IMG/VR virus record: IMGVR_UViG_3300043449_002710
Location: 124,001 to 188,000 of that record
Length of the DNA: 64,000 nt
Strand: one strand, 5' to 3'
The notes under the pieces are model-generated. The model made no database searches. It was not told where the DNA came from and saw only the letters and a list, made by a program, of their open reading frames with translations. The stretch's first letter is position 1. Each line of letters starts with the position of its first letter. The translations under genes and the position numbers were made by a program. This document shows positions 1,751 through 64,000 of this stretch, piece by piece.

Positions 1751-1765
1751 AAACTAACAATAAGC

Positions 1766-2311: not shown

Positions 2312-2340
2312 CCCCTCAATTAACCAAAATCGAAACGGTT

Positions 2341-2559
2341 TTAACCTAACTCTTGGCGGATTTGTCTGAAGGCCGACATCCAATTACGGGTAGATCTCGG
2401 GTCATCGCTTCGGGTTTGGCGAGGGACCACAATCACTTTACGGTCTTTGACCCACATCTCGCCGTGGCGGACTCTGCGCACGTAGACAAAACCCTCTTCT
2501 CGTAAGAGCCTGATCTTGTCTCGGTACTTCGGGGCCTGCTTGATCATGGGCCAATTCAT
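2341..2559 (-). CDS. HicA-like small protein
   Basis: LLREEGFVYVRRVRHGEMWVKDRKVIVVP pattern, 72 aa. Confidence 0.5.
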   Translation of the reverse strand: MNWPMIKQAPKYRDKIRLLREEGFVYVRRVRHGEMWVKDRKVIVVPRQTRSDDPRSTRNWMSAFRQIRQELG

Positions 2560-30123: not shown

Positions 30124-30212
30124 TGGTGCCGAGGATCGGAGTCGAACCGATACGTCCCTTGCGAAACTCAGGATTTTAAATCCTGTGCGTCTACCAATTT
30201 CGCCACCCCGGC
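30124..30212 (-). tRNA. tRNA-Leu (anticodon TAA), CCA encoded
   Basis: GCCGGGG acceptor, TGGTAGA D loop, CAGGA-TTTAAAA-TCCTG anticodon arm, long variable arm, GTTCGA, ACCA. Confidence 0.95.
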
Positions 30213-49859: not shown

Positions 49860-51224
49860 TTAGAAAGCCAATTTTAATACGCAAGTCACACCTGAGGTTA
49901 AACCGTTAATAGTAAGCCTATCAAAGCCAGCAGAAATTGTGGCCGCAACAGCAACAGTTGCTCCCGAATCTTCTCTCCAAGCGTGATAATTAGGACGCCA
50001 AGCATTGGCTGCACTCGTATTGGTGCCAGCTCCACCGCTTGTTCCATATACAACCGTGAATTGAGTTCCACCGATTGTCGCCATTGGGAGTCTGATTCTG
50101 GCGGAAATCAAATTCACCCCGGCTGGAATTGTAAAAGTTCCAATAGCACCAACGCGAGCAAAAGTTATCCCACTGCCGTCTGCGAAAACTTCCACCTCTT
50201 CATTAGCTGTAGAAGAAGCTATATAACGAGAAAGCGATGCCCCACCACCGCCACCTACGGTAGTCCAACTCGTGTCGTAATCAGAGGCAGAATTTTTGGT
50301 TAATACTTGCCCCATCGAACCACCGGTTGGAACACCTGCACCCGTAGGGCCGGTGGGTCCTGCTGATCCAGCGGTTCCATTTGCGCCCGCAGGGCCGGTG
50401 GGTCCAACAGCTCCATCAGCGCCCGCAGGGCCGGTGGGTCCAACAGCTCCATCAGCGCCCGCAGGGCCGGGGGGTCCAATAGCTCCATCAGCGCCCGCAG
50501 GGCCAACATCACCCTGAGGGCCTGTTGGGCCTCCCGCAGGTCCAGGTTCGCCTTGAGGCCCCGTAGGGCCCGTATCCCCTACCGCGCCAATCGGTCCTGC
50601 CGGGCCCGTAGGTCCAACTTCGCCTGCCGGGCCGGTGGGGCCAGCCGCGCCGTCAGCTCCAGGGGCACCCGGCGCACCAGGAGAGCCAGGAGAGCCCGCA
50701 ATGCCGGAGGGGCCCATATCCCCTTGAGGGCCTGTAGGGCCAGTAGGTCCCGCATCGCCATCAAAACCCGCAGGGCCTGTCGGTCCCACAGGGCCAGTAG
50801 CTCCATCAGCGCCCGCAGGGCCAGTAGCTCCATCAGCGCCCGCAGGGCCAGTAGCTCCATCAGCGCCCGCAGGGCCTGTTGGGCCTCCTGCCGGACCCGG
50901 CTCGCCTTGGGGGCCCGTAGAACCATTTGCGCCTGCAGGGCCTGTCGGGCCTGCAGATCCAGCATTACCCGCAGGGCCTGTCGGTCCCGTAGGTCCGGTT
51001 GCTCCAGGTTGTGGAGTTGGGGGAGGTGGGATAGGATCGCCTTCTAAAATGATTTCAAAAATCAAATGGTCATATTGAGTAGCGGAAGCCACTTCGAGTT
51101 GATCAAAAGTCAAAGGATAAAGACCAAAAGCAGGGACACTTAAGGACTCTTGATAAGTCGAGTAAGCCAAGGTGAAAACTTGCGGGATACCCGTTTTATT
51201 TCTAATGTTCGCTACGTATGCCAT
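49860..51224 (-). CDS. Collagen-like (GPT/GPA) fibre protein
   Basis: About 70 GXY triplets; N-terminus homologous to 46997..48415; [16 protein letters not shown] linker. Confidence 0.88.
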
Positions 51225-51252
51225 TCTTTTTCTCCCTCAAAATTAAAAATTT

Positions 51253-51618
51253 TTACGGTGCTGTATAATTCAAAACTTGTTTGGGTGTGAGCGGTGCCCC
51301 ATTGTCTTGCTGAACCTGCAGCACGTTTTCATAAATCAAGTCTAAGAGTCGGGTTAAAAAACTTACATCCCCACCATTACGAGCATTGCTCACCAAGACT
51401 TCAAAGTCGGCGTCTTCGATCAAAAAAGTTTCACCGGGTCTAAGGTTAATTTGGAAAGCACTCCCATTCCGAATCGGATCTGCCGAGGAAGCGTTAATCG
51501 GTCTTGGGATCAAAACATTCGAGATCGGCCCTAACTGAAGAGCAAAGGCATTTGCTGGGGCCGTGCTAATAACCGGGTGTGAAGCAAGGGCAGTTGGGGT
51601 AAAAGAAATGTTAACCAC
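51253..51618 (-). CDS. Small structural protein (GTG start after GGAGAGG)
   Basis: Late-type motif at 51638..51645; first gene of the fibre operon. Confidence 0.55.
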   Translation of the reverse strand: MVNISFTPTALASHPVISTAPANAFALQLGPISNVLIPRPINASSADPIRNGSAFQINLRPGETFLIEDADFEVLVSNARNGGDVSFLTRLLDLIYENVLQVQQDNGAPLTPKQVLNYTAP

Positions 51619-51694
51619 AAGTTTTTCCTCTCCCAAGAAAATAACTCAATTTTTGTCTCGGTCCTCTTTTGAATAGAATCGTTATTCTTTATAT

Positions 51695-52660
51695 ATGTCC
51701 ACTTTACGAGGTCCAGGACCGGTTCGAAGTTTAAGGCAAGCCATAGAAGACCGAAACGCGAAATTCTCCCGCACAGAAGTCTTAGAGGATGAACCGTACA
51801 AGCAAGCTCTAGAACAGCTCCTCCCTCAAATCGCAGCCGAAAGTGAACAAGCAGCCAAACCCGCAAGAGTCCCGTTTCTTTATTATCGGAAAAAAAGAAT
51901 GGGCAGGCGCTGCTCTTGTTTCCACATCGAAACTTCTCCAGACGCAAATTGTCAGATTTGTTTTGGCTGTGGCTATGTCGGCGGTTGGGATTTACACGGC
52001 TGTCGATCCGAATGGATTGATGTGACCCAAGAAAATTTAAGATTGGTCAATCTTCAAGCCGATACCCAAGCAGGGACTAGACCAGTCTATTTCACCATGG
52101 AGGATGGAACAAACAGATCTTTCTTGGAACTCGATTTAGAGATTGTCAGAAACATCAAAAAAACCCAATGCCTTCAGATCGCGGTTGGAAACAAACGTAG
52201 GGGGGCTTCAGTCGATGCTTTTGTAAAAGCATCGGGGGATTTGAATTTTGTTCCGCTCACGGAAGCTAATTTGGATGCTAGGCTAAATGAGAGTAAGCTT
52301 TCTTTTCGAATCGAATTGAATAGAAACAATACTACAGTCGAATCCCCTAGACTCAGCCATGTCTTAATTCGATATCAATTAGTCCCAGAGATTAGAATGT
52401 ACGGAGATATGAATCTTGGGGATAATGCTTTTGAGTTAGGAGATCTCGGTTTCTTCGATTCGTTTTCCACCTTGAATGTCTACGTCCCACCTAGCTTTGA
52501 TCAGATTAACAATGAAGACTTTTTGATTCGGCAATCCGACCAAAAACGATTCAAAGTCACGCGGTTTCAACGCAATGCTCCACTCGAAGTATTAACAAGT
52601 CACATGGTCACAGCTCGGCTTCTGATCCCTGGAACAGATTCTTTGATTTATTTTCCTTGA
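51695..52660 (+). CDS. Putative head-completion/neck protein with Zn finger
   Basis: GRRCSC..CQICFGCGYVGG; late-type motif upstream. Confidence 0.5.
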   Translation: MSTLRGPGPVRSLRQAIEDRNAKFSRTEVLEDEPYKQALEQLLPQIAAESEQAAKPARVPFLYYRKKRMGRRCSCFHIETSPDANCQICFGCGYVGGWDLHGCRSEWIDVTQENLRLVNLQADTQAGTRPVYFTMEDGTNRSFLELDLEIVRNIKKTQCLQIAVGNKRRGASVDAFVKASGDLNFVPLTEANLDARLNESKLSFRIELNRNNTTVESPRLSHVLIRYQLVPEIRMYGDMNLGDNAFELGDLGFFDSFSTLNVYVPPSFDQINNEDFLIRQSDQKRFKVTRFQRNAPLEVLTSHMVTARLLIPGTDSLIYFP

Positions 52661-52697
52661 TCGTTTTTAGCGGTAGATAATTTGGTTAATAGTATTC

Positions 52698-53759
52698 ATG
52701 CCGCTCAAGATCGCCGTTTACGCTATAGCGAAAAACGAAGAAAAAAATATTTCAAGTTGGTTGGAAAACACAAAAAATGCAGATTTCCGATTGGTCTGTG
52801 ACACTGGAAGTACAGACAAAACCTTGGAGATATTGAAAGAAAACAATATCGAAACTTGCCAGATTACAGTCAGCCCTTGGCGGTTTGACATTGCTCGTAA
52901 TACCGCGCTGAATCTTCTACCTTCCGATATTGATGTCTGCATTTGGCAAGACTTTGACGAAACTTTCAATCCGAACTGGAGAGAAGAATTGGAAAAGAAT
53001 TGGGTGGGTGGGACCACGACCGTCTATCACAAGTATCGAAACAACAATTCTTCCTGGCAATGGCACAGCAAAATCCACGCAAGACACTACTGCATTTGGG
53101 CAGGCTGCGTACACGAAACATTGAAATGGTCTTGTCCCGAAAAAGATATCTGGATTGCAGAGATCTATCTAGATGAAAAGCAAGACCTAGAAAAAGACCG
53201 ATCCGGTTACTTGAAGCTTTTGGAAAAGAAAATATCGGAAGGGGATAACCATTGGAGAACTTTTTATTTCCTATCCTCCGAGTATCAAAAAATTGAAAAT
53301 TGGAATCAGGACATAGCTTATAAGATAAAAAGCTTCCAGTTTTGCCAAGACGGAGGAGTCTCCAAATCCTACATCGCAAGAAACATCGCTATTTCTTACC
53401 AGCAGTTAAAAAACTGGTCGGAAGCTGAGAAGTGGTTAAAGACGGGATTGGATGAAAGCGAAGAAAGAGAAACTCTTTTTGCCTTAGCCTATTTGTATTA
53501 CGCACAGAAAAAATGGGGCGAATGCTACATCTACTCCAAAAAGTGCCTTGAAAAAAAAGAAAGAAGAGACGGATTCACTTTCGATGCGAGAGCCTGGGGA
53601 GAATCGCCTTTCGATTTAGCGGCTTTATCCGCCTACAATTTGGAAATGTATTCAGAAGCTTGTTCTTTGGGGAAGAAAGCCCTTGAATTAAAGCCCAACG
53701 ACCCTAGACTTCTTTTAAATCTCAGAATGTACGAGAACAAAAATGGTCAATCGCGCTAA
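52698..53759 (+). CDS. GT2 glycosyltransferase with TPR repeats
   Basis: YAIAKNEE, DTGSTD, FDIARN, QDFDE, VHE; TPR C-terminus. Confidence 0.92.
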   Translation: MPLKIAVYAIAKNEEKNISSWLENTKNADFRLVCDTGSTDKTLEILKENNIETCQITVSPWRFDIARNTALNLLPSDIDVCIWQDFDETFNPNWREELEKNWVGGTTTVYHKYRNNNSSWQWHSKIHARHYCIWAGCVHETLKWSCPEKDIWIAEIYLDEKQDLEKDRSGYLKLLEKKISEGDNHWRTFYFLSSEYQKIENWNQDIAYKIKSFQFCQDGGVSKSYIARNIAISYQQLKNWSEAEKWLKTGLDESEERETLFALAYLYYAQKKWGECYIYSKKCLEKKERRDGFTFDARAWGESPFDLAALSAYNLEMYSEACSLGKKALELKPNDPRLLLNLRMYENKNGQSR

Positions 53760-54846
53760 GACTTGTGTTTATGCCATCTGTTTGAATGAGATTAAATTCG
53801 TGGACGCTTTCATGAAGCATTCGAGTGAAGCGGATTTAATTCTCGTTTGTGATACCGGATCGACGGACGGAACTGCAGAGAGGTTAAAAGAACTCGGAGC
53901 TACAGTTCATCGCATCACTCAAAAACCTTGGCGCTTTGACGTGCCTAGGAATACGGCGCTGAGCCTTGTACCTAGTGACATCGACATCTGCCTCAGTATC
54001 GACTTAGACGAGCAGCTTCAGCCTGGGTGGAGCGCCGCTTTAGAAAAAGTGTGGCAAGAGAAACAAGGAACAATCAAGCGGGTGTCCTATGACTACACTT
54101 GGAATTGGAAAGCAGACGGAACGCCCGATGTCAGATTCTTTACCGATAAGATCCACCATCGCCATGGTTACCGCTGGAAGCACCCTTGTCACGAAACTCT
54201 GTATTGGGAAGGAGAAGGGTCTGAGGTTTATGTTCAGATCCCTGAGATCAAGCTCCATCACTTTGCCGACCCTACAAAAAGCCGAAGCCAGTATCTGCAT
54301 TTATTGAAGCTTGCCGTCGAAGAAGACCCCAATGGGGATCGGATGCGGCACTACTACGCTCGCGAGCTAATGTTCAAAGGTCAGTACGAAGAAGCCATTA
54401 AGCACTTTGAGCATCATTTGAAAATGCCCCAAGCTACTTGGAAAGAGGAGCGCTGCGCAAGCTTGAGATTCATTGCTCGTTGCCACAGGTATCTAGGCAG
54501 AAAAGATCTCAGCCAAGAATGGGCCATCAAAGCGATTTTGGAGTTATCTACGACCCGCGAGCCTTGGTTGGACTTGGCTCAATCCGCCTATTTCAATCAG
54601 GACTGGCCCACTTGCTTTTGGGCTGCCACCAAATGCTTGGGCATTCAAAACAAGACTTTGAGTTACATTGCGGATGCGAGCGCCTGGGGATTTGAACCTT
54701 ATGACTTGGCTGGGATTAGCGCATGGCATCTGGGCTTAAAAGAAAAAGCCAAGGAATATAGCCTAGAAGCCTACAAACGGTTTCAAGATAACCGATTAAA
54801 AGCCAACTGTTTAGTCTTAGGATGGAAGCCTGACGAATTACCTTAA
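53743..54846 (+). CDS. GT2 glycosyltransferase with TPR repeats
   Basis: YAICLNE, DTGSTD, FDVPRN, IDLDE, CHE, YYARE; TPR C-terminus. Confidence 0.92.
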   Translation: MVNRAKTCVYAICLNEIKFVDAFMKHSSEADLILVCDTGSTDGTAERLKELGATVHRITQKPWRFDVPRNTALSLVPSDIDICLSIDLDEQLQPGWSAALEKVWQEKQGTIKRVSYDYTWNWKADGTPDVRFFTDKIHHRHGYRWKHPCHETLYWEGEGSEVYVQIPEIKLHHFADPTKSRSQYLHLLKLAVEEDPNGDRMRHYYARELMFKGQYEEAIKHFEHHLKMPQATWKEERCASLRFIARCHRYLGRKDLSQEWAIKAILELSTTREPWLDLAQSAYFNQDWPTCFWAATKCLGIQNKTLSYIADASAWGFEPYDLAGISAWHLGLKEKAKEYSLEAYKRFQDNRLKANCLVLGWKPDELP

Positions 54847-54863
54847 GGGTTATTTTTTAGAGT

Positions 54864-56432
54864 ATGAGAGCCTACTTTAAATTCCCCACCCTTGCTGCGA
54901 TTGTTCTAGGGCGTAATGTTGTCAACGTTCCTGGGATTGAGGACTTTGTCGAAAAATTCGAGCAAAACGATCCAAGAATCGACAACTGGCTGAAGCGGAA
55001 TCTGAGGAATTGGCTCATCAAGGATTACGACCGTTTCAGGCAGATCACACACCAAGAAGGAAACCCCGACTGGGTAGGCAAGGCCTTGGAGCGCGGTGAG
55101 AAAGTCTATGAAGTCAGACTTGATCGAGAGATCTTTGACAAGATCTCTCATGTGATCGATTGGTTCAAATCGGACGACTCGCCTAAAAGGCTGGATGCCG
55201 TAACGGTGCCCGAAGCCCTCAAGCAATCGGACGCCTGGACTGAGAAGCTTACCAAAAAGAAAGTCGATCAAGGGATTGCTCTTGCGGGAGAAGAGATTTT
55301 TAAAAAGTACGGTGACGGGTATTCTTGGCGCAAATTGGTTTCCGAAGAAGCTTTGGTTCTTGAAGGAAAGAAAATGGGCCATTGCGTGGGCGGTTACTGG
55401 AGTTCTGTGCAATCAGGGGAGACCGAGATCCTTTCCTTACGCGACCCTAAAAACGAACCTCACTGCACAGTTGAAATTAGCCACAACGAAGTACGTCAAA
55501 TCAAAGGCAAGCAAAACAAATCGGTCATCAAAGAGTATTGGTCTTATGCACAAGACCTTTTGAAAACTTTGAAAGAAAACGGCGTTTATGTCGGTGCTAA
55601 CAACTTATCCAATATTGGTCTCTATGAGATCGATGGAAAGATTGTCACTTTCAAAGAACTTGTAGCAAACCTAGACTTAGTGAAAGCTCTTTTGAAAAAA
55701 CATTTCGGTATTGATGTGACGGATGAAATGCAAGTCCAAGTTACCGAAGATGGAATTGAAGTCGGATCTAAATTTGTGGATATCCTTTTGGGGTTTTTGC
55801 CTCTTCCACGTAGACAAATTGAAGCCTATAAAAATCTCATGGAGGATTCTTACGACACAGAATTTTCCATTCACGACCACGATGTCACCGATCTCTATGA
55901 CTATGTAGAAAAGCATTACCCCAAGGCTTACAAAAGATTGGTGAAGCTTCTTGAAAGTGTCGCAACCGAGGAAGAAGCTAAAAACGAAGACTACTTGAGC
56001 CACCGCTCGGCAAGCACTTTCTTGAAGGTGTATTCCGATGAATTGCAGCCGATTTATGATGCCGCGATCTCAGGAATCTCTGACGGCTGGAGTGTTGGAA
56101 CACAAGACGCTGCTCACAAATACGTCAAAGATAAATTGTCGGAGTACGGTTGGCTGTGCGATTCCTATACTTCCGAAGATGGAGACGGTACAGTTTGGCT
56201 TCATCTCAGTTCTAGCGCAATTGCGGATGGTTATTTAGGTGATCTCTACAAAGACCCCTACGGAAGAAGAGATGGCTTTAATAGCGAATTCGATGAAGAA
56301 GTTGCCAAGGAGCGCTTTGTCGATGCGCTATTTGAGAATGGTTTCCTAAATCAAGCGGATATGGCGAGTAAGAAAAAATTAAAATCCGCTTTGGAGTATC
56401 CGGCTTTGGGAAAAATCCTAACTAGATTTTAA
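54864..56432 (+). CDS. PcfJ-like domain protein tagged at both ends
   Basis: EGKKMGHCVGGY..ILSLRD...PHCTVEI..QIKGKQN; FPTLAAIVLG and YPALGKILTRF*. Confidence 0.75.
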   Translation: MRAYFKFPTLAAIVLGRNVVNVPGIEDFVEKFEQNDPRIDNWLKRNLRNWLIKDYDRFRQITHQEGNPDWVGKALERGEKVYEVRLDREIFDKISHVIDWFKSDDSPKRLDAVTVPEALKQSDAWTEKLTKKKVDQGIALAGEEIFKKYGDGYSWRKLVSEEALVLEGKKMGHCVGGYWSSVQSGETEILSLRDPKNEPHCTVEISHNEVRQIKGKQNKSVIKEYWSYAQDLLKTLKENGVYVGANNLSNIGLYEIDGKIVTFKELVANLDLVKALLKKHFGIDVTDEMQVQVTEDGIEVGSKFVDILLGFLPLPRRQIEAYKNLMEDSYDTEFSIHDHDVTDLYDYVEKHYPKAYKRLVKLLESVATEEEAKNEDYLSHRSASTFLKVYSDELQPIYDAAISGISDGWSVGTQDAAHKYVKDKLSEYGWLCDSYTSEDGDGTVWLHLSSSAIADGYLGDLYKDPYGRRDGFNSEFDEEVAKERFVDALFENGFLNQADMASKKKLKSALEYPALGKILTRF

Positions 56433-56462
56433 ATTGACTTATTAAGTCAATTAAGTTAAAAT
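56432..56462 (+). promoter_or_regulatory. Sigma70 promoter overlapped by perfect palindrome
   Basis: AATTGACTTA-T-TAAGTCAATT; TTGACT-17-TAAAAT. Confidence 0.75.
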
Positions 56463-56468
56463 TCTCCT

Positions 56469-56915
56469 GTGGCAAAAAAAACTCGCCTTAAAAACTATCC
56501 GAGTCTTGAAATGGTTTTATCCATGGCCTTTAGTCGGGACCGTTGGGTGGACAAAGTTAGGCACCGGTTAGAGGGGGCTTTGGGCGAATACGCCAAGCAG
56601 AAGTTTGCCGAAGCCATTGGATACACGGGTTGGGATTGGACCATTGAAGTAGAAACGATTCTGGCAGGTGTTTCGGACTTAATGAACACTAAAAAAGTTC
56701 AAACCAAAACAAAATTTGACCGCAAAAAAGCTTTCCAAGAAGCTTACCAAGATGCTCAGGGCAGTTATGATCAAATCGTCCACGCTCGAAACACCTTGTG
56801 TAGAGAGCATCCATTCAACATGGAACAATACCAAAGAATTAGGCTTGTAAAACTAGATGCCGATACTTTGCTTAGAGAAATGGTTCTTAAATTTCTCCCG
56901 GGGATTTTGAATTAA
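56469..56915 (+). CDS. YP-tagged hypothetical protein
   Basis: KNYPSLEMVLS. Confidence 0.7.
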   Translation: MAKKTRLKNYPSLEMVLSMAFSRDRWVDKVRHRLEGALGEYAKQKFAEAIGYTGWDWTIEVETILAGVSDLMNTKKVQTKTKFDRKKAFQEAYQDAQGSYDQIVHARNTLCREHPFNMEQYQRIRLVKLDADTLLREMVLKFLPGILN

Positions 56916-56924
56916 ACACGCCAC

Positions 56925-56953
56925 TTGACCTGCTAAGTCATTTGATATAACAT
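56925..56953 (+). promoter_or_regulatory. Sigma70-like promoter with related operator
   Basis: TTGACC-17-TAACAT containing TGACC-TGC-TAAGTCA. Confidence 0.6.
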
Positions 56954-56962
56954 TGCTATAGC

Positions 56963-57547
56963 ATGTCTTACTCTAAAAAGTTGATTCAGATTAGGTCCAA
57001 GAAAAACTGGAGCCAGGAAAAGCTGGCCTCCCACCTGAATGTCAGTTTCGCTACCGTGAATCGATGGGAAAATGAAAAATCTGAACCGCAAAGAGAAGCC
57101 AGAGAGTCGATTGATGTTTTGTGGGGAAGCCTACAAGAAGAAAACTACCCTGCCCTCAACCAAGTCCTCGCGCATTCGAAAAGATCCAAGCTCACCATTC
57201 TTTTGGACGAGAACCTTTTTCAGCTCAAGCCAGCCCTAAAAGACTCTGGGTTTAAAGTCATCTTAATGAAAAAAGGAACCTCCGACGAGGAGATTAGGGA
57301 GCTTGCCGAAGGCACTGCCATCCTCACAACTAATTCCAAAGACTTTATTCCCCACGCTGTCGCGGACGATTTCGATGTCATCTCGGCGGAACTGATCAAG
57401 TTCATCGATACTGAGCCCACTCGTAAAAACCAGACGGTTCAAAAGATAGCCAAAGCCATTCGAGAAAGTGGGATGGTTTTCACCCGTGGTAATTTCAATT
57501 TAGTCGTCCGAGATGACGGATCTTACGAACTCAAACCTTTAGTCTAA
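56963..57547 (+). CDS. XRE HTH fused to PIN-like (DUF5615/Mut7-C-type) domain
   Basis: SQEKLASHLNVSFATVNRWENEKSEP; ILLDENL..SDEEIRELA..ILTTNSKDF. Confidence 0.82.
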   Translation: MSYSKKLIQIRSKKNWSQEKLASHLNVSFATVNRWENEKSEPQREARESIDVLWGSLQEENYPALNQVLAHSKRSKLTILLDENLFQLKPALKDSGFKVILMKKGTSDEEIRELAEGTAILTTNSKDFIPHAVADDFDVISAELIKFIDTEPTRKNQTVQKIAKAIRESGMVFTRGNFNLVVRDDGSYELKPLV

Positions 57548-57553
57548 GTTGAG

Positions 57554-58120
57554 TCACTTCTTAGGCCGCTTAGCTTTAAAGAAAGCTCTCCCTAAGCAAA
57601 TGGCATCTGCAATGTCGTTGTCTTTGATTTTTAACTCCAGGCCATACATGGCGTTAGCAGCCCTGACGGACAGGTGCTTTTTAGTAACCCTGCCACGCTT
57701 TTTACCGGCTGAGACTTGGCGGTTATTTTTCAGATCCTCTTTGCTCATCCGAAGCTCTAAGAGCTTTCTCCACTCGCTCGGATCGAGGTAATGAACCTTG
57801 ACCCCCACAGCCCTAAAGTTCTCCAAAACCGCTTTATGGGTAAATTCTAGGATACGCTGGGTATGCCTGTTTTTTCCACGTACTGTATTCTCAGCCACTA
57901 CTTGATCGGGCTTGTACTTACCCCAAAGTTCCATCACCTTGTGAGCCATCTTGTTTGAGGCATCTAGGATGTTGTAAGGGTACTCGGGCATCTTCTCAGG
58001 GTAGCCGTTGACGTTGAAGTTGGGGACCGAGATTTCGATCACCCCAAAATCTCCTAGGTTATCATCCTTGATAACTGCCCACCCTGTCGATGTACTTAAA
58101 TCGAGCGCTAGAATTTTCAC
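57554..58120 (-). CDS. RuvC-like Holliday junction resolvase
   Basis: ILALDLSTSTGWA, VVAE, PSEWRK, DIADAICLG. Confidence 0.85.
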   Translation of the reverse strand: MKILALDLSTSTGWAVIKDDNLGDFGVIEISVPNFNVNGYPEKMPEYPYNILDASNKMAHKVMELWGKYKPDQVVAENTVRGKNRHTQRILEFTHKAVLENFRAVGVKVHYLDPSEWRKLLELRMSKEDLKNNRQVSAGKKRGRVTKKHLSVRAANAMYGLELKIKDNDIADAICLGRAFFKAKRPKK

Positions 58121-58132
58121 ACTGATGTTTTA

Positions 58133-58543
58133 CTAATCCACTTTGGATTTCAAAGCGCCCGACTCCATGTGCTTTCTGAGAGTCTTCATCATGAGCTTGC
58201 ACTTCTTGCCGCGATCCTTGATCTCTTGCCGCCAGGATTTCACGTAGTAAGCGAGATCCTCTTTGGCTTGAAGATGATCTTGAGTCATGTGGTTGAGCTT
58301 CACTTCTTCAAGCTTTCTTTTAGCCTCAATCACATCGGGTTCTTGCTCAAGCTTTTCCTTGTGCGCTTTCAGTTCTTCTTCGAGGTCGAGCTTCTTGGCG
58401 TCATTCTTGAGCATCTCTTTGGACCGCTCAAGCATCAGTTGCTCACGAGCAGCTTCAATCGCCAAATCCTCAGGCTTCATGGCGTTGATCGCGTCCACGA
58501 CTTCCTGAGGAAGGTCACCCTTCTTCTTAGGTTTCTTAGCCAT
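58133..58543 (-). CDS. Coiled-coil hypothetical protein
   Basis: SD AGGGGG, charged helical composition. Confidence 0.6.
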   Translation of the reverse strand: MAKKPKKKGDLPQEVVDAINAMKPEDLAIEAAREQLMLERSKEMLKNDAKKLDLEEELKAHKEKLEQEPDVIEAKRKLEEVKLNHMTQDHLQAKEDLAYYVKSWRQEIKDRGKKCKLMMKTLRKHMESGALKSKVD

Positions 58544-58624
58544 GCTTCCCCCTAGGCTCTCTCAAATTGATTTTGAAATCACGCTAGGGGATTTCGGATC
58601 GTCTGTCAAATCAAAGAACCCGAC

Positions 58625-59125
58625 TCACCGCTTCTTAAGCTTGGCCTTTTTCATGGTCGGGTATTCCATCTCCGCTTTAGCGCGAGCTTTTTTAGCTAAA
58701 GTTTCTTTTTCCTTTTTAGTCAACCGCTTCACTTTGGCTTTAGAAGCTTTTGCTCTTTTTCCCTTTTTGACTTTGGCTTCGATGACTTCCGAAACAGAAG
58801 CAAAGATCGAGGCAAGTCCTGGGTAGCGATTGGAATCCACTTGAACCTTGGTCACCATTTCTTTGACTGCACCACTTTTCTTCACAAGATTCTCCAGTAC
58901 GGGTTCAATCGCTTCCAAGGCTTCGTCTGCCCACTTGCGGTCGAGATCCTTGGTGGTTTCTTCAAGCTGATCGTAAGGAACAAAAGATTGCTCCCAACGA
59001 GCGCTGCGCTCGGCACTAACTTCGGCTTTGACAGCCTTTGCCCAGTGAACCCACGCCTCGTGAAAAACTTCAGCCAAGGATTCTTTGATCTGATCTTTTG
59101 TTTCTTTGTCCATTTTAAACCTCAA
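58625..59125 (-). CDS. RyR-like domain protein with YP tag and basic tail
   Basis: LAEVFHEAWVHW..FVPYDQLEETTKDLDR; YPGLASIFAS. Confidence 0.65.
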   Translation of the reverse strand: MRFKMDKETKDQIKESLAEVFHEAWVHWAKAVKAEVSAERSARWEQSFVPYDQLEETTKDLDRKWADEALEAIEPVLENLVKKSGAVKEMVTKVQVDSNRYPGLASIFASVSEVIEAKVKKGKRAKASKAKVKRLTKKEKETLAKKARAKAEMEYPTMKKAKLKKR

Positions 59126-62100
59126 ACATCTTCGTAGGTGCCGTCTTCGAAAAGAATGCCCACATGATAGCCTTTGTCGATGTGCTCTTCGGCGAGATCC
59201 ATGGCTTCTTCGTAGGTTTTAACTTTGACTTCTTTTTTTCCTTCACCTTTTTTATCAAGGATGACAGTCAGTTCTTCATCTTTCGCGGAAGCTTCTGCCT
59301 GATTGTCATATTTCTCGATGATCGACCCGATGTCAGTATACAAGAATTTATTCTTTTCTCGGTCATATACAACGGTCAAGTTGTAGGTATCGCCCGAGTT
59401 AATATACTGAAATCTTGGACGGGTCGGATTGCTTTCATTCGGGTCGTAGGCTTCCACACCGTGGTATCCCACTAAATCAGAAACGTGCTCCAAGATATTT
59501 TCGACATAGCTAGCTGGGTTATAAGTATTGTGCTTTTTGTCGTAATATCTTTCGCCGTTCTCATAGGCTTTTTTAGCTTCAGCCATGGCCGCTTTCAATT
59601 CTTCCAAGGTGGTTGAGGCTTGCGTTTTATAATAAGAAGACTCCACAACAGATATCTGAATATCCCCAATAATCTTCTTAATGGTTTCAATCGCCAAATT
59701 CGGATCGACCTTACCTGGAATCTTAAGAATGCTATCGTCGTCAAAGGAGATGCCAGAGACGCCTAAAGCTTTCTCGATTTTTTTGATCTGATCCAAAGAG
59801 ACTTTGTCAAAACCAATTTTGAGTGCAAAAGCGGTTTCTGAAGCAGAGGCTTGCGTTTTATAAGAAGACTCCGCAGTGAATCCGTCAAACCAATCACCGA
59901 ACTCTTCGGTGTGTTTGACATTCTCAGGTTTTTCACAAGTCTTAGAGCTAGTCTCGTCGTCGTTGCACCACTCTTTCGCTTCTTCCAAAGACAGCCCTTT
60001 TTTCATGACTTTTTGAGGGTGGCCTTCTTTATAAAAGCGAACGATCTTGTAGGTTTTTTCTTCTTCTTCTTCTTCCTCGTCTTCATCTGAGGAGGCTTCA
60101 ATTTTCTCGCTAGAAAGGTATTCCACCAAGTCGTCAGCCACAACCGATCCATCGGCTTCGATCACGACCGGAACACCGGCTTCTGGATCTTCACCCATGG
60201 ACTCAGCCCAGAAGATATAGACTTCATCGGGTTTAGCGGCATACTCGACCCCACGCTGAACTTCCATCAGGTCTGGGAGATCGCCCACTTTGGGTTCTTC
60301 GATGATGGTTTCATTTCCGGCCTTATCGACCAGGATGAGCTGGCAGCCTTCCATCACCTCGTCATCACCAAGCTGAAAGTAGTCTCCACGATTAGAGGAA
60401 ACTTCATCTCCGTTCTCATCGATGAGAACAGCGCTCTTATACTTCACAGCGGGGTTTTCTTTAACTGGGCCTGAGAAGAAAAAATCTTTCACCCAGAGGC
60501 GATCAATCTTGTCGCTGTCTTTGAACACGTCGATGTAAGTGCCTTGATACTTATCGAATTCGCGGTGTTCGCATTCAAAGCCATGCTTCTCAAGTTCTTT
60601 ACAGATCTTGTCAAAAGTCTCGTGATCGTAATCCTGATCGGCTTCGCCAGTGGCTTCAATCCGAACAGCGGCTTGCACCGAAGATTTGCTGGTCAATTCC
60701 ATAGTGTTGCCTTTGTCGTCCTCAATGTGTTTTCCGAACGGGCTAGAGTCTTTGACCCATTTCCAGTTGCCGGTCCCAAAAAACTTGTTTGCTTTGATTT
60801 CGGCAGCTTTAGTTGGATCGCCAGAGATCAAAACCTCCCAAGGCTTTCCGATCTTAGCGGAGTCTTCGTCATAGATATGGATGCGGTCGAATTCTTTGGC
60901 AAGATTCGGGAAAGGATCGGACTCCGCCGACTTGACGGCTTTTTTGGCGGCAGATTCCATTTTGTAAGGGCTCACATTGCCGTGATCACTCACGTACCAA
61001 ACGTTAGGCCAAAAGTTATGCTTTTGCATCCAAGCCTTGGCAGCGGCTTCTGCTTCCTCTGCCGTATTGAACTCGCCAAGGAATTCCCCATTTTTAATAG
61101 AGACAGAAATCTTTGATCCTAGTGGGCCTGAGTCAGAAAAAATAATGTCCTGGTCGTCAGGTTGATCATCTTGAAATTCTTCTTCTTCGGATTCTTCTTC
61201 TTCGGATTCTTCCGTAGCCGAAAGAACACCGTGTTCATAAACGTCTTCAGCAAATTGATCGAAATCCATCCGATCTTCGATTGAATAGTCTTGATCGAGT
61301 TTGTACTGCTGGTACATGGATTCAAGCTCTGTGAGGTTTTCTTTTAACCAAGCTTCAAAATCGGTTAGTTCTTCCACGAGTTCTCCGCCTTCCCAGTCTT
61401 CTTCAGCACCACTTTTAACTTTGTTTTCAGTCTTGGCTGTCCACATATCTTGGTTCTCGCTGTCTTCTGGCTTGGTGGTGATGATCAGAGAGTTCCCATC
61501 CACGTCACTCCACTCTGGAATAAGAGTGGGGTAGGTTTTCTTGGTTTTGAATCTCCAGAAAAAATCCGTAAGGTTATCCGCAAACTTTTCTACTCTATGC
61601 GGGTCAGCCAAGATGTCTCCGAGTTCCAAAGCCATCTTACCTTCGCCAAGCTCTTTCAAAGAGTATTCACCGTGGAGTTCTTTATCCAAAAAGATTTCCA
61701 ACGTGGTTTTGAACTTCTTCAAATCCGAATCCGAATCGTCTTCGGCTCCACCCACAGCTTGATTTCCATTTTTAGGCAGCCTAACCATTCGGCTGTGTCC
61801 GGTGAAACCAAATTTCTTATAAAATGTTCTTAATTTTGAAATCGGCATTTTGTTTTTCTCTTTAGGTACGGGCTGTAAATCAAGAATCACGCCATACTTA
61901 TCCGCTAAATCTACAATAAACTGCATTGCTCTTGTGCCTTGGCCTTGTCTTGGTTCTAAGGCTTGAATCCACTTCAGAGCAACTGAGCGTTCCCCTTTGG
62001 GTCCACCCAGCCAAGGTCTCAACTCGATCACCGCTTCATTGTTAAAAATTCTAATTTTATTTTCAAATGGGTGTGGCTGGGTTTTTCCCCAGACATCCTT

Positions 62101-62784
62101 CATAAATTTATCAATATTATCCGACTTCAAATCGGCTGGGCTAGCCTCTTGATCTGTTCGCAAGCGGAGTTTAAGTTTTTGAGTTTCGGAAGAGGTCAGC
62201 ATCTTTACACTCTTTCCAAACTTGTCTTTAAGATGAGATGCGACTAGCCCCAAAAGATTCTTATTAAAAGGGGCATCCCTGTCATCGGATGCGAATTTCT
62301 TAATGCCCATTTTAGCAAGCTTGGTCCAGTCCAAAAGGGCTTTAGCTTCAGGGGCCGCTTCCTTCTTGTGCTTCTCGGCCAAGGCTTTGGCCATCTCAGA
62401 GATCTCTTCGTCTCGGGCGATTTGGTTCACTAGATCCCTGACCTGATCCCGATAGCCGCCTGGAAGCTTCTCTGGCATCGAAGTGTTGAAAAACTCTTCT
62501 GGCTTCTGCTCGATCTTCCAACCCGAGGAACTGGCAATTTGTTCCAAGTATTTGGTGTGCTTCGAGGTGGTTCGAGAATACTTCTTCTCGTTGACGTAGA
62601 GAAGATCGCTTGGCGCATCGCGTTTAGCGATAATGGTGCGATAGCTGTAAAGGGTGTCGCCCTTGGCCCAGATGATATCTCCGTCTTTGCCTACGCTTTC
62701 GCCGGTAGATAACCAAGAACGAATCAAGCCTTCTTCTTTGGCCCCAGCCATAGCCTTCTCAGCCACAATCTTTTGTCTTGCCAT
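59122..62784 (-). CDS. Large acidic modular polyprotein-like protein including a GNAT domain
   Basis: RQGQGTRAMQFIVDLADKYGV...LRTFYKKFGF; domains separated by hydrophobic-x-A/S/G acidic linkers. Confidence 0.7.
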   Translation of the reverse strand: MARQKIVAEKAMAGAKEEGLIRSWLSTGESVGKDGDIIWAKGDTLYSYRTIIAKRDAPSDLLYVNEKKYSRTTSKHTKYLEQIASSSGWKIEQKPEEFFNTSMPEKLPGGYRDQVRDLVNQIARDEEISEMAKALAEKHKKEAAPEAKALLDWTKLAKMGIKKFASDDRDAPFNKNLLGLVASHLKDKFGKSVKMLTSSETQKLKLRLRTDQEASPADLKSDNIDKFMKDVWGKTQPHPFENKIRIFNNEAVIELRPWLGGPKGERSVALKWIQALEPRQGQGTRAMQFIVDLADKYGVILDLQPVPKEKNKMPISKLRTFYKKFGFTGHSRMVRLPKNGNQAVGGAEDDSDSDLKKFKTTLEIFLDKELHGEYSLKELGEGKMALELGDILADPHRVEKFADNLTDFFWRFKTKKTYPTLIPEWSDVDGNSLIITTKPEDSENQDMWTAKTENKVKSGAEEDWEGGELVEELTDFEAWLKENLTELESMYQQYKLDQDYSIEDRMDFDQFAEDVYEHGVLSATEESEEEESEEEEFQDDQPDDQDIIFSDSGPLGSKISVSIKNGEFLGEFNTAEEAEAAAKAWMQKHNFWPNVWYVSDHGNVSPYKMESAAKKAVKSAESDPFPNLAKEFDRIHIYDEDSAKIGKPWEVLISGDPTKAAEIKANKFFGTGNWKWVKDSSPFGKHIEDDKGNTMELTSKSSVQAAVRIEATGEADQDYDHETFDKICKELEKHGFECEHREFDKYQGTYIDVFKDSDKIDRLWVKDFFFSGPVKENPAVKYKSAVLIDENGDEVSSNRGDYFQLGDDEVMEGCQLILVDKAGNETIIEEPKVGDLPDLMEVQRGVEYAAKPDEVYIFWAESMGEDPEAGVPVVIEADGSVVADDLVEYLSSEKIEASSDEDEEEEEEEKTYKIVRFYKEGHPQKVMKKGLSLEEAKEWCNDDETSSKTCEKPENVKHTEEFGDWFDGFTAESSYKTQASASETAFALKIGFDKVSLDQIKKIEKALGVSGISFDDDSILKIPGKVDPNLAIETIKKIIGDIQISVVESSYYKTQASTTLEELKAAMAEAKKAYENGERYYDKKHNTYNPASYVENILEHVSDLVGYHGVEAYDPNESNPTRPRFQYINSGDTYNLTVVYDREKNKFLYTDIGSIIEKYDNQAEASAKDEELTVILDKKGEGKKEVKVKTYEEAMDLAEEHIDKGYHVGILFEDGTYEDV

Positions 62785-62921
62785 TCGAGTATTCCCTAAG
62801 TCGTTTGAATTGCTACTAAGAAAATAACTCGGCTTTACTCGTCTTTGACCTGAACCCCCCAGGCAACCCCACCCCTAAAAACGAACTCAGAATTAGTAAA
62901 ATCAACCCCAAGGGGAAGCGC

Positions 62922-63767
62922 ATGAGATCGGGGTTAGAAAATAAAAAGCATATCGTTTGCTATTCTGGTGGGCACTCTTCGGCTCTAGTCGCGGTGGAAG
63001 TCGTTCGCAAGTACGGCAAAGAAAACGTGATCCTGCTCAATCACGATATCCACGCATCCGTCGAGAGCGAAGACATCAAGAGATTCAAGAAAGAAGTAGC
63101 CGATTACCTCGAACTTGAAATCACCTACGCCAATCACCCCGATTGGGACAGTAAAGATCAGTTTGACGTTGTTCGCGAGGCCAATGCTTTCAAGGTCGGA
63201 AACGGCACCGCCCTTTGTACCAACCGCCTCAAGACCGCCCCTTTTGACAAGTACCTGAAAGAGAACTTCCCAGTCGAAACGGATGGCGAAAGCCCTTGTG
63301 TGATCTATTACGGGTTTGACGCCAATGAGCCAGCGCGTATTTTGAGGCGAAGCTCGATCCTAGGAACCAAGGGCTATTTGACAGCCTTCCCCTTGGCCCA
63401 TTGGCCAAGGACGATTCAGTCCACAAAAGAGATCGGAATTGAGCCACCCAACACTTACAATCAATTCAAACACGCCAATTGTATTGGTTGCCTGAAAGCT
63501 GGCCGCCAGCACTGGTACATCGTCTACTGCACAAGGCCCGATCTCTGGGAGAAAGCCAAAAGCACCGAGGACGCGATCGGATACTCGATCATCAAAGACA
63601 TTTACTTAGACGAACTCGAACCCAAGTTTGAGCTGATGAAAAAAGTAGGGGTGGTTCCGACCGAGCATCTTCACCACAAGACTTTCTGGAAACAGGTCGC
63701 CGACCAACTCAAGCAAAGTATGAGCGAAGAAGAGAAGTCCGAGAAACCTTGCGAGTGCGTGTTCTAA
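62922..63767 (+). CDS. PAPS-reductase-like (PP-loop) protein
   Basis: YSGGHSSA, CTNRLK, GFDANE..R, HANCIGC.K, C-terminal CEC. Confidence 0.85.
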   Translation: MRSGLENKKHIVCYSGGHSSALVAVEVVRKYGKENVILLNHDIHASVESEDIKRFKKEVADYLELEITYANHPDWDSKDQFDVVREANAFKVGNGTALCTNRLKTAPFDKYLKENFPVETDGESPCVIYYGFDANEPARILRRSSILGTKGYLTAFPLAHWPRTIQSTKEIGIEPPNTYNQFKHANCIGCLKAGRQHWYIVYCTRPDLWEKAKSTEDAIGYSIIKDIYLDELEPKFELMKKVGVVPTEHLHHKTFWKQVADQLKQSMSEEEKSEKPCECVF

Positions 63768-64000
63768 TGAAAAAAATATTCGTGAGCTTCTCAGGCGGCA
63801 GGTCTTCTGCCTTGATGTGCAAAATCGTTTTGGAAAAATACCCGGACTCCGAAAAAGTCTTCGTGTTTGCCAATACCGGAGAGGAGCACCCCAAGACCTT
63901 GGACTTTGTTCACCAAGTCGATCAGCACTTGGGTTTGAACTTGGTTTGGGTCGAGGCTCAAGTCGAAAGAGCGGGTAAGGGATGCACCCACAGGATCGTC
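63767..64000 (+). CDS. Second PAPS-reductase-like protein (partial)
   Basis: Manual translation MKKIFVSFSGGRSSALM...FANTGEEHPKTLDFV. Confidence 0.85.
   Translation, partial: MKKIFVSFSGGRSSALMCKIVLEKYPDSEKVFVFANTGEEHPKTLDFVHQVDQHLGLNLVWVEAQVERAGKGCTHRIV

What the first reader, a model, noticed from the sequence alone, without database searches (positions are those of the whole stretch)
56432..57547. Autoregulated HTH-[tag]-PIN fusion with two operator-bearing promoters
Seen: a perfect 21-bp palindrome overlaps a consensus promoter (56432..56462), and a degenerate copy sits in the same position in the next promoter (56925..56940). The downstream protein is XRE-HTH, then YPALNQVLA, then a PIN-like domain. 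Inference: the HTH represses both promoters, while the junction tag could package the protein and allow the RNase domain to be cut free in the virion. Both genes have tags but host-type promoters.
Basis: partly seen in the sequence, partly recalled or inferred. Interest (0 to 1): 0.6.

Follow-up and report, generated by a model that had tools for sequence, protein, structure and literature searches.

The report
Self-repressed HTH–tag–PIN-like phage fusion protein
An uncultivated freshwater jumbo phage has fused a DNA-binding repressor domain onto a small nuclease-like protein exactly at a short peptide tag that about twenty of its other proteins also carry, and a perfect palindrome on the neighbouring promoter suggests the fusion protein throttles its own expression.

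Summary
A perfect 10+1+10 palindrome (56432..56452) lies inside the best sigma70-type promoter of the region (TTGACT-17-TAAAAT, 56434..56462). A 16/21 copy lies in the same register in the next promoter (56923..56943). The 194-aa product of 56963..57547 is an XRE HTH, then YPALNQVLA, then a DUF5615/Mut7-C-like minimal PIN-like domain.

Three things are new. About 250 relatives of the C-terminal domain exist, nearly all 110-150 aa and standalone; close ones carry the tag at their N-terminus. Only this phage and one 72%-identical relative have the HTH, so this is a recent domain graft. The relative's gene also has a consensus promoter with a perfect but different inverted repeat. The tag is a real protein-level motif: 15 strict matches against 0.065 in shuffles. 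It occurs at N-termini, at C-termini and at two domain junctions.

My reading is an Aca/AcrIIA1-like or TA-operon-like autorepressor fused to a probable nuclease effector. Packaging and cleavage at the tag remain an untested analogy to the T4 capsid-targeting sequence. ORF148 as antitoxin has no support. Nuclease activity, DNA binding and tag function are all untested.

The parts
54864..56432 (+). PcfJ-like protein (522 aa). It has a tag-like peptide near its N-terminus (FPTLAAIVL, from 54882) and a C-terminal tag (YPALGKIL, 56397..56420, 3 residues before the stop). It is preceded by the phage-type motif GGGTTATTTTTTAGAGT-ATG.
   Evidence: Pfam PcfJ E 5e-15; tags; upstream motif
56432..56452 (.). 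Operator candidate O1: a perfect 10+1+10 dyad, AATTGACTTA-T-TAAGTCAATT. It covers the -35 hexamer and spacer of P1.
56434..56462 (+). Promoter P1, TTGACT-17-TAAAAT. The -10 ends 6 nt before the GTG at 56469, a leaderless-type arrangement.
   Evidence: 10/12, the best in 14 kb; the orthologous promoter in L018 is TTGACC-17-TAGAAT, 6 nt before its ATG
56469..56915 (+). ORF148, a 148-aa protein of unknown function. It has an N-terminal tag at residues 10-17 (56496..56519). The conserved core starts at MAF.R..W...LEGALGEYAK.
   Evidence: No Pfam, PHROG, NCBIfam or PADLOC hit; 8 homologues, with the tag only in the closest
56923..56943 (.). Operator candidate O2: a degenerate copy (16/21) with the right half TAAGTCA intact and the left half TTGACCTG. 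It is in the same register to the -35 as O1.
56925..56953 (+). Promoter P2, TTGACC-17-TAACAT. It ends 9 nt before the ATG at 56963.
56963..57547 (+). HTH-tag-PIN-like fusion gene (194 aa plus stop).
56963..57145 (+). XRE-type HTH domain and long helix 4 (residues 1-61). The Pfam HTH_3 core is residues 9-43.
   Evidence: Pfam; AF2 helices 3-14, 18-24, 29-36 and 44-61; VIA-align Z 7-8 to HigA2, Aca7, P22 c2 and C-proteins
57146..57172 (+). Tag YPALNQVLA (residues 62-70). It is a short helix with lower pLDDT (68-74) at the domain junction.
57191..57544 (+). DUF5615/Mut7-C-like minimal PIN-like domain (residues 77-194). The family-conserved residues are D82, E83, N84, D108, T122, N124, D127, F128, D136 and D149.
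   Evidence: ESM-Atlas shape match TM 0.64-0.68 by query and 0.73-0.79 by target to DUF5615 clusters; Pfam sub-threshold; conservation over 148 family members
57554..58120 (-). RuvC-like Holliday junction resolvase, convergent, 6 bp from the fusion gene's stop. The fusion orthologue in L001 is also adjacent to RuvC, but divergent.
   Evidence: PHROG 159 E 1e-15; L001

Best explanation
The gene 56963..57547 encodes a lineage-specific graft. An XRE-type HTH (residues 1-61) was fused in frame to the N-terminus of a pre-existing phage protein. That protein already began with the phage's peptide tag, followed by a DUF5615/Mut7-C-like minimal PIN-like domain.

The most likely working:
- Host RNA polymerase fires P1 and P2 early. 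Both start almost at the start codon, giving leaderless or near-leaderless mRNAs.
- P1 gives ORF148 and, by read-through, the fusion gene. P2 gives the fusion gene alone.
- The accumulating fusion protein dimerises. PIN-like domains commonly dimerise, and an isolated HTH_3 has no dimer interface.
- The dimer binds the perfect dyad O1 over -37..-17 of P1 tightly and the degenerate O2 in P2 more weakly. This shuts the cassette down to a low, self-limited level.

Functionally it works like the brake of acr-aca operons, especially the Acr-Aca fusion AcrIIA1, or like the autoregulation of Xre-PIN toxin-antitoxin operons. It caps the dose of a probable metal-dependent nuclease effector that could harm the phage or the host if over-made.

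The tag is an independent, portable docking peptide shared by about 20 proteins. Here it merely marks the old N-terminus and now lies in the linker.

Shown: the sequence features, the architecture, the fold, the rarity of the fusion and the reality of the tag. Inferred: DNA binding to O1 and O2, repression, dimerisation, nuclease activity, early timing and leaderless transcripts.
For: - The perfect dyad lies exactly over the -35 and spacer of the best sigma70-like promoter in the region. A 16/21 copy lies in the same register 491 bp downstream, before the HTH gene.
- Only 3 sites in 223 kb match at <=5 mismatches.
- HTH_3 scores above the Pfam cut-off. Its fold matches autorepressors: HigA2, Aca7, Aca10, P22 c2 and R-M C-proteins, Z 7-8.
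- The only other fusion lineage is P0002, 72% identical and seen in three independent assemblies. It has TTGACC-17-TATAAT with a perfect 9-6-9 inverted repeat over the -10, 8 nt before its ATG.
- The ORF148 orthologue without a neighbouring HTH-PIN gene keeps the promoter but lacks the dyad.
- The profile search found 253 representatives. None of 20 N-terminally extended members has an HTH, so the HTH is a recent addition to a tagged standalone protein.
- A conserved acidic and polar constellation across 148 members argues for an enzyme active site: D82 136/148, D108 129/148, T122 145/148, N124 125/148, D127 117/148.
- Precedents exist: HTH-bearing Acr-Aca fusions repress their own strong promoters through inverted repeats (PMC9410906), and Xre-PIN gene pairs are known (PMC2701414).
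Against: - There is no experimental or expression data. The only sequencing run that holds the locus is the source DNA metagenome.
- The two fusion lineages have an identical recognition helix (VSFATVNRWE) but different operator sequences and geometry. At least one inverted repeat may therefore not be the cognate site.
- P2 alone is a chance-level promoter match.
- The P1/P2 similarity could reflect a duplicated promoter rather than a shared operator.
- The homodimer prediction gave no verdict.
- The link to DUF5615 is below Pfam's cut-off. Only 4 of 97 family members hit it at E<=0.01.
- An Asn replaces the canonical T-x-D Asp, so nuclease activity is uncertain.
Confidence: 0.5

Rival explanations
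1. The tag is a capsid-targeting and processing signal. The full-length protein is loaded into proheads through the junction tag, and a prohead protease cuts at or next to the tag. The free PIN-like nuclease is then stored in the virion and injected into the next host. The HTH only regulates expression before packaging.
For: - The tag is real and portable: 15 strict matches against 0.065 expected, with varying third codon positions.
- It heads about 14 otherwise unrelated small orphan proteins. This resembles T4 internal proteins, which share only a 10-20-residue capsid-targeting sequence (PMC5694885).
- Tagged proteins include effector-like ones: two PcfJ-like proteins, a weak Tpt1/KptA-like one and this PIN-like one.
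- Three tagged ORFs lie 3-5 kb downstream of the major capsid gene on the same strand.
- Tag variants are conserved in related large phages.
Against: - No S77, S78 or ClpP-like protease was detected, although the record is 81% complete and the Pfam capsid model also missed the capsid protein.
- No conserved cleavage residue follows the tag.
- At least 5 tags are at extreme C-termini, which T4-type capsid-targeting sequences are not.
- Both genes have host-type promoters.
- There is no virion proteomics.
Confidence: 0.12
2. It is a pure transcription factor. The PIN-like domain has lost catalysis and serves only as the dimerisation or ligand-sensing domain of a phage repressor. The main target of that repressor is ORF148 and possibly other genes.
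For: - Asn replaces the third canonical acidic residue.
- XRE regulators need a dimerisation domain. Aca2 uses its C-terminal domain for this (PMC9410906).
- A weak third operator-like site exists at genome position 5533, matching 17/21.
Against: - The same residues, including D82, D108 and D127, are conserved in about 250 standalone homologues that have no DNA-binding domain. The domain therefore has a function of its own.
- Only two good operator copies exist in the genome.
Confidence: 0.15
3. It is a single-chain toxin-antitoxin-like module. The HTH part neutralises the PIN-like toxin in cis and represses the promoter. Proteolysis of the linker or tag frees the toxin, for addiction or abortive-type killing. 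ORF148 could be a further antitoxin.
For: - COG4634/PIN_10 proteins are predicted toxins paired with DNA-binding antitoxins (PMC5499597).
- Xre-PIN pairs are common (PMC2701414).
- The HTH fold resembles HigA2 and MqsA antitoxins.
Against: - The domain family is almost wholly standalone in large lytic-type phage contigs, with no conserved partner gene.
- ORF148 is not co-conserved with it.
- No PADLOC hit lies outside the HTH.
- A lytic jumbo phage has little use for an addiction module.
Confidence: 0.08
4. There is no regulation. The dyad is incidental, because a -35 TTGAC is mirrored by a GTCAA. P2 resembles P1 because the promoter was duplicated. The fusion is a neutral accident.
For: - Dyads with 10-nt arms occur about 5 times in the genome.
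- The P1/P2 similarity extends over the whole promoter, 22/30.
- The operators of the two fusion lineages differ.
Against: - Both fusion lineages independently carry a perfect inverted repeat on the promoter next to the HTH gene. I estimate the chance of the L001 repeat in a 72-nt spacer at roughly 0.01.
- The fusion is kept at 72% identity across lineages.
- The 7-nt TAAGTCA lies in the spacer, which sigma70 does not constrain.
Confidence: 0.1

Closest known systems
AcrIIA1 and other Acr-Aca fusions, and acr-aca operons in general (Aca1-Aca13)
   Same: - An N-terminal HTH is fused to a C-terminal effector domain in a phage accessory region.
- A strong sigma70 promoter carries an inverted repeat within the core promoter.
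- Autorepression acts as a brake after an early burst (PMC9410906).
- The HTH fold matches Aca7 and Aca10 at Z 7.7 and 7.3.
   Different: - There is no sequence relationship to any Aca or Acr family.
- The effector here is a PIN-like nuclease fold, not a known Cas inhibitor.
- An anti-defence role is only suggested by the neighbouring PcfJ-like gene, which has a weak ArdA hit.
- There are two promoters with graded operators.
Xre-PIN and DUF433-COG4634/PIN_10 (VapBC45, VapBC10) type II toxin-antitoxin operons
   Same: - A DNA-binding module is coupled to a Mut7-C-group PIN-like domain.
- A palindromic operator sits in the promoter.
- The predicted logic is to keep a nuclease in check (PMC5499597; PMC2701414).
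   Different: - It is one polypeptide instead of two genes.
- The DNA-binding part is XRE, not DUF433.
- The family is phage-borne, standalone in about 250 representatives, and has no conserved antitoxin.
- It carries T-x-N where DUF5615, as I recall its motif, has T-x-D.
T4 capsid-targeting sequence of internal proteins and Alt
   Same: A short peptide of about 10 residues, often straight after Met-Lys-Lys, is shared by many otherwise unrelated small, fast-evolving phage proteins and some effector-like enzymes.
   Different: - There is no sequence similarity beyond a loose K-x-Y...hydrophobic pattern.
- There is no L/I-x-E cleavage motif, and no gp21-like protease was found.
- The tag also occurs at C-termini and inside linkers.
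- Virion location is unknown.
Controller (C) proteins of restriction-modification systems and phage repressors such as P22 c2 and RstR
   Same: These are small XRE HTH proteins that bind dyads overlapping their own promoters. Fold hits are C.Kpn2I, C.Csp231I, C.AhdI and P22 c2. The top NCBIfam partial hit is RstR.
   Different: Those proteins are standalone HTH dimers with their own dimer interface. Here the HTH is fused to an enzyme-like domain.

Membership tests
XRE / HTH_3 (PF01381) DNA-binding domain | Profile match above the curated cut-off | tested here: met
   34.5 bits against a cut-off of 23, residues 9-43
XRE / HTH_3 (PF01381) DNA-binding domain | Five-helix lambda-repressor-like fold | tested here: met
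   AF2 pLDDT 89-95 over residues 1-50; Z 7-8 at rmsd 1.5-2.7 A over 55-59 residues to HigA2, P22 c2 and a designed HTH
DUF5615 (PF18480) / Mut7-C group of PIN-like domains | Profile match above the curated cut-off | tested here: not met
   19.5 bits against a cut-off of 23.8. Only 4 of 97 family members hit DUF5615 and 2 hit Mut7-C at E<=0.01. The whole-genome HMM scan found nothing.
DUF5615 (PF18480) / Mut7-C group of PIN-like domains | Shared three-dimensional fold | tested here: met
   Shape search of the ESM Atlas: four DUF5615 clusters at TM 0.64-0.68 by query and 0.73-0.79 by target, 106-111 residues, rmsd 2.2-2.5 A. The PDB has only generic Rossmann-like and receiver-domain matches, Z<=7.
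DUF5615 (PF18480) / Mut7-C group of PIN-like domains | Conserved acidic active-site residues: Asp after strand 1, and the T-x-D and D-F motifs | tested here: inconclusive
   D82, D108, D127, D/E136 and D149 are conserved, but the T-x-D Asp is Asn in 125 of 148 members. The canonical motif is recalled from knowledge of the family and was not aligned here.
Type II toxin-antitoxin system (VapBC / Xre-PIN type) | Two adjacent genes, antitoxin and toxin, conserved as a pair | tested here: not met
   It is a single chain. ORF148 is not linked to PIN-like genes in L001, L018 or the P0027 contig. Neighbours of standalone homologues vary.
Type II toxin-antitoxin system (VapBC / Xre-PIN type) | Toxicity of the PIN part, neutralised by the partner | not testable with these tools
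   Needs expression assays.
Acr-Aca-type autorepressed anti-defence cassette | HTH repressor, standalone or fused, plus an inverted repeat inside a strong core promoter of its own operon | tested here: met
   O1 in P1, O2 in P2, and the inverted repeat in the L001 promoter
Acr-Aca-type autorepressed anti-defence cassette | The co-encoded protein inhibits a host defence system | not testable with these tools
   The only context is a PcfJ-like neighbour with a sub-threshold ArdA hit. PADLOC gave nothing informative.
T4-type capsid-targeting sequence | A short conserved terminal peptide shared by unrelated proteins of one phage | tested here: met
   15 strict matches and 21 loose matches, against 0.065 and 1.3 in shuffles. 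Most lie within 3-11 residues of the start.
T4-type capsid-targeting sequence | Removal by a prohead protease at a consensus site; proteins present in the virion | tested here: inconclusive
   No S77, S78 or ClpP hit, but the record is 81% complete and the head genes are too divergent for Pfam. No conserved residue follows the tag. There is no proteomics.

The most novel reading that the evidence does not exclude
The YP-x-[LV]-x-x-[IV]-L peptide is a portable targeting signal of a whole clade of uncultivated freshwater large phages, working at either terminus or inside a linker. It loads a changeable set of about 20 effector-like proteins into the capsid, or onto another common hub. HTH-tag-PIN would then be a natural two-in-one protein: an early autorepressor that is later captured through its internal tag and processed, delivering a nuclease to the next host.
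Probability: 0.12. Interest if true: 0.8.

Novelty: new variant of a known kind. Interest (0 to 1): 0.55.

Why it matters
Three reasons.

1. It is a clean natural example of a regulator being grafted onto an effector at a module boundary. It could extend the Acr-Aca and TA-operon logic of self-limited expression to a nuclease-like protein of jumbo phages.

2. The C-terminal domain defines a phage family of about 250 clusters, related to DUF5615/Mut7-C. That is the only PIN-like group without a solved structure or a demonstrated activity.

3. The shared peptide tag offers a testable handle on how uncultivated large phages address many accessory proteins to one destination. If it is a capsid-loading signal that works at either end of a protein, it would also be a useful tool for packaging cargo.

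Tried and rejected
- Homodimer prediction (complex prediction, two copies with alignment A1): no verdict, median 0.31 against a mark of 0.42. This is evidence neither for nor against.
- Foldseek against the PDB, with the full-length and the C-terminal model: nothing at E<=1e-3, only generic alpha/beta folds.
- VIA-align wide search: the HTH was identified, but the C-terminal domain gave only receiver-domain and Rossmann-like matches at Z 6-7.
- Profile searches of PDB sequences with A2 and A4: noise only.
- Protein-atlas feature search: no usable hit.
- INPHARED nucleotide search found no match. The protein search matched only the HTH.
- IMG/VR scan with A2: two loci, neither a fusion.
- Word search with the HTH alone (residues 1-61): nothing.
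- Search for the operator in related loci: absent.
- An internal TTG at 57119 as a separate start for a tag-PIN product: rejected. The SD is poor and the start is not conserved in P0002.
- The dyad as a terminator: rejected. It has a 1-nt loop, an AT-rich stem and no T-run.
- The tag as a DNA- or RNA-level element: rejected, because third codon positions vary freely.
- Prohead protease, ClpP and HK97-capsid Pfam models on the phage's own genome: no hits.
- Sequencing runs: only the source DNA metagenome holds the locus and no RNA run does.
- Rfam: only one tRNA in the window.
Full report
**Setting.** The window is bases 124001-188000 of a single 223,260-bp IMG/VR virus record, linear, with CheckV completeness 81%. 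It has no close relative among 50,697 deposited phage genomes. The only sequencing run holding the locus is a freshwater DNA metagenome that is probably its source. The standard bacterial code reads all genes, and no other code was used.

**The observation.** The sequence at 56432..56452 is AATTGACTTA-T-TAAGTCAATT, a perfect 10+1+10 dyad.
- It lies inside TTGACT-17-TAAAAT (56434..56462), the best sigma70-like match (10/12) in 50000..64000.
- Promoter-like matches as a class are not enriched there: 10 found against 13.7 in shuffles.
- The weight therefore rests on the position. The site is intergenic, and the -10 ends 6 nt before the GTG of ORF 56469..56915.
- Dyads with arms of 10 or more occur about five times in the genome, against about one in Markov shuffles.

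**The second promoter.** TTGACC-17-TAACAT (56925..56953) ends 9 nt before the ATG at 56963.
- On its own it is a chance-level match at 9/12. It aligns to P1 at 22 of 30 positions.
- The 21-mer at 56923..56943 matches the dyad at 16/21, in the same register to the -35. The 7-nt TAAGTCA in the spacer is intact.
- Genome-wide only three sites match the dyad at five or fewer mismatches: O1, O2 and a 17/21 site at genome position 5533, in an AT-rich intergenic region.

**The protein.** The 194-aa product has Pfam HTH_3 at residues 9-43 (E 2e-8, above the cut-off). It has a sub-threshold DUF5615 match at residues 79-135 (E 9.5e-4; 19.5 bits against 23.8).
- AlphaFold2 with a 23-sequence alignment gives mean pLDDT 90.7. 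The model has five helices, then a short helix at 63-72 that is the tag (pLDDT 68-74), then an alpha/beta domain.
- The HTH superposes on HigA2, Aca7, Aca10, P22 c2, MqsA and R-M controller proteins at Z about 7-8.
- The C-terminal domain was folded alone (pLDDT 88). It has no convincing PDB match.
- It does match predicted structures of four DUF5615 clusters in the ESM Atlas: TM 0.64-0.68 by query, 0.73-0.79 by target, 106-111 residues, rmsd 2.2-2.5 A. It also matches two unnamed viral clusters.
- DUF5615/COG4634/PIN_10 form the Mut7-C group of the PIN-like superfamily. They are described as a reduced PIN fold without a solved structure, and as predicted TA toxins partnered with DUF433 (PMC5499597).

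**The family and the fusion.**
- The word search found 23 relatives.
- An exhaustive profile search of 1.84 billion representatives found 253 at E<=1e-3.
- Almost all are 110-150 aa and consist of the domain alone.
- Twenty members with N-terminal extensions were scanned against Pfam. None has an HTH or any other domain.
- Only P0001 (this gene) and P0002 carry the HTH. P0002 is 72% identical, 197 aa, and present in three independent assemblies. The fusion is therefore real but confined to one shallow lineage.
- The closest standalone homologue, P0003 (78% identical), begins MKNFATKYPALVKVLAHSKRSKLT. The tag is thus the original N-terminus, and the HTH was added in front of it.
- P0043 and P0083 are further tagged members.
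- Across 148 members, conservation is as follows:

| Residue | Conserved in |
|---|---|
| D82 | 136/148 |
| E83 | 117/148 |
| D108 | 129/148 |
| T122 | 145/148 |
| N124 | 125/148 |
| D127 | 117/148 |
| F128 | 132/148 |
| D/E136 | 133/148 |
| D149 | 111/148 |

- This looks like an active site. However, the position that is Asp in the DUF5615 T-x-D motif (recalled from knowledge of the family, not aligned here) is Asn throughout. Nuclease activity is plausible and unproven.

**Evidence bearing on autoregulation.**
- In L001, the contig of P0002, the fusion gene sits behind TTGACC-17-TATAAT, 8 nt before its ATG. A perfect inverted repeat, ATATAAAGT-6-ACTTTATAT, lies over the -10.
- That is independent support for an operator on the promoter of this gene.
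- The sequence and the orientation of the half-sites differ from O1, although the predicted recognition helix (VSFATVNRWE) is identical in the two proteins. I cannot reconcile this.
- In L018, an ORF148 orthologue (63% identical) has no HTH-PIN gene downstream. It keeps a TTGACC-17-TAGAAT promoter 6 nt before its ATG but has no dyad.
- Dimerisation, which a dyad needs, could not be supported. The homodimer job gave no verdict.

**ORF148.** It has no family match in Pfam, PHROGs, NCBIfam or PADLOC.
- Its eight homologues share a core starting at MAF.R..W. Only the closest also has the tag.
- That homologue has an ATG at the position of this ORF's GTG and the same N-terminal sequence, which supports the GTG start.
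- It is not next to a PIN-like gene in L001, L018 or the P0027 contig.
- The suggestion that it is an antitoxin therefore has no comparative support.

**The tag.**
- The strict pattern YP[TASV][LV]..[IVL]L occurs 15 times in 272 crude gene products, against 0.065 in residue shuffles (maximum 1 in 200). A looser pattern occurs 21 times against 1.3.
- Third codon positions vary freely, so it is selected at the protein level.
- About 14 copies lie 3-11 residues after the start Met, usually after Lys/Arg.
- At least five lie 2-4 residues before the stop. These include the PcfJ-like protein ending at 56432 and the ORF at 19540..20112(-).
- Two lie inside longer proteins: this fusion, and a 526-aa ORF at genome 198645..200225, where a Met precedes the tag.
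- The carriers are nearly all orphans. The exceptions are two PcfJ-like proteins and a weak Tpt1/KptA-like N-terminal part.
- Related contigs carry the same tag: L001 MRNLYPQLIRILS, L004 MKLNSKKYPALASVLA, L019 MNPLHYPALAQVLA. A 328-kb contig has a variant, L.ALKKVVA.
- The nearest precedent is the T4 capsid-targeting sequence. It is a 10-20-residue N-terminal propeptide shared by internal proteins and Alt, and gp21 removes it (PMC5694885).
- Three tagged ORFs lie a few kb downstream of the major capsid gene (6661..7770(-), phrog_2522, E 9e-55).
- Against a simple T4-like reading stand the C-terminal copies, the absence of a conserved cleavage residue, and no detectable S77, S78 or ClpP protease. 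The last point is weak, because the Pfam capsid model also missed the capsid protein.
- The tag's function stays open. A docking peptide for a common partner is what the distribution shows; which partner is inference.

**Conclusion.**
- The best-supported mechanism is a self-repressed early cassette. A recently grafted XRE domain lets a DUF5615-like, probably catalytic, phage protein limit transcription from P1 strongly and from P2 weakly.
- It works like AcrIIA1 and acr-aca brakes (PMC9410906) or like Xre-PIN operon autoregulation (PMC2701414).
- It meets the architectural criteria of the former. It fails the two-gene criterion of the latter.
- Packaging and cleavage at the tag is an attractive but untested extension.
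- I rate it a new variant of a known kind. The genome-wide tag is the most interesting open element.

Noticed in passing
Genome-wide; in the window e.g. 54848..54866 before the PcfJ-like gene. Also genome 30860-30875(-), 120592, 119780, 147647(-) and 207303(-).: The motif R-S-TTATTTTTT-A-G-R-R begins about 15-16 nt before the ATG of at least 15 genes, tagged and untagged, including a 2451-aa ORF. The 7-mers GTTATTT and GCTTATT are 11-fold enriched upstream of genes. It is a candidate phage-specific promoter or leaderless start signal, distinct from the sigma70-type P1 and P2.
   Followed up: partly
window 56462/56469 and 56953/56963; genome 61376, 129272, 170192, 188969; L001 5964..6000; L018 129..163: Sigma70-like promoters end only 6-9 nt before the start codon, and no Shine-Dalgarno is present. 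Early genes of this phage clade seem to be made from leaderless or near-leaderless mRNAs, one of them starting with GTG.
   Followed up: partly
window 1756..1773; genome 120561..120583: Two palindromes built on AAGCTTATT (AACAATAAGCTTATTGTT and AAAGCTTATTT-C-AAATAAGCTTT) sit just upstream of two other tagged genes. This may be a second operator family, or part of the phage-type start motif.
   Followed up: no
window 19540..20112 (-); genome 120608..120946 (+); genome 198645..200225 (+): Further tag copies: C-terminal ...NYPTISKVIKG*, N-terminal MRPLDTLTDRYPLIAAVLA, and an internal tag in a 526-aa protein. In the last, the tag is preceded by a Met (DMKTQTPKKQYPTLSAILA), which looks like a second in-frame fusion of two former genes at a tag.
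   Followed up: partly
L020 (328-kb metagenome contig) 671..1024, 8016..8309(-), 6781..7200(-): A more distant large phage has a different recurrent N-terminal peptide, L-x-A-L-K-K-V-V-A/G. This suggests lineage-specific variants of the same kind of tag.
   Followed up: no
L004 1672..2073 and 2077..2499: A relative has tandem paralogues of the PIN-like gene. The first is untagged and the second tagged, and they are 4 nt apart.
   Followed up: no
window 6661..7770 (-), 4809..6566 (-), 336..1352 (-) and neighbours: The major capsid gene (phrog_2522) is followed by a Mom-like/GIY-YIG homing-endonuclease fusion ORF. Further on are what look like dTDP-rhamnose pathway genes (RmlA-D-like N-termini), judged by eye only.
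   Followed up: partly
genome 5533..5553: A 17/21 match to the O1 dyad (AATTGAGATATTAGGTCAAAT) lies in an AT-rich intergenic region. It may be a third weak operator or a chance match.
   Followed up: partly
P0024 (192 aa, 2.2-kb JGI contig): An HTH 56% identical to the one here, with the same VSFATVNRWE helix, is fused to an HsdM_N domain. The same HTH type has thus been grafted onto different partners.
   Followed up: no
window 30127..30212 (-): One tRNA gene (Rfam RF00005, 59.7 bits).
   Followed up: no
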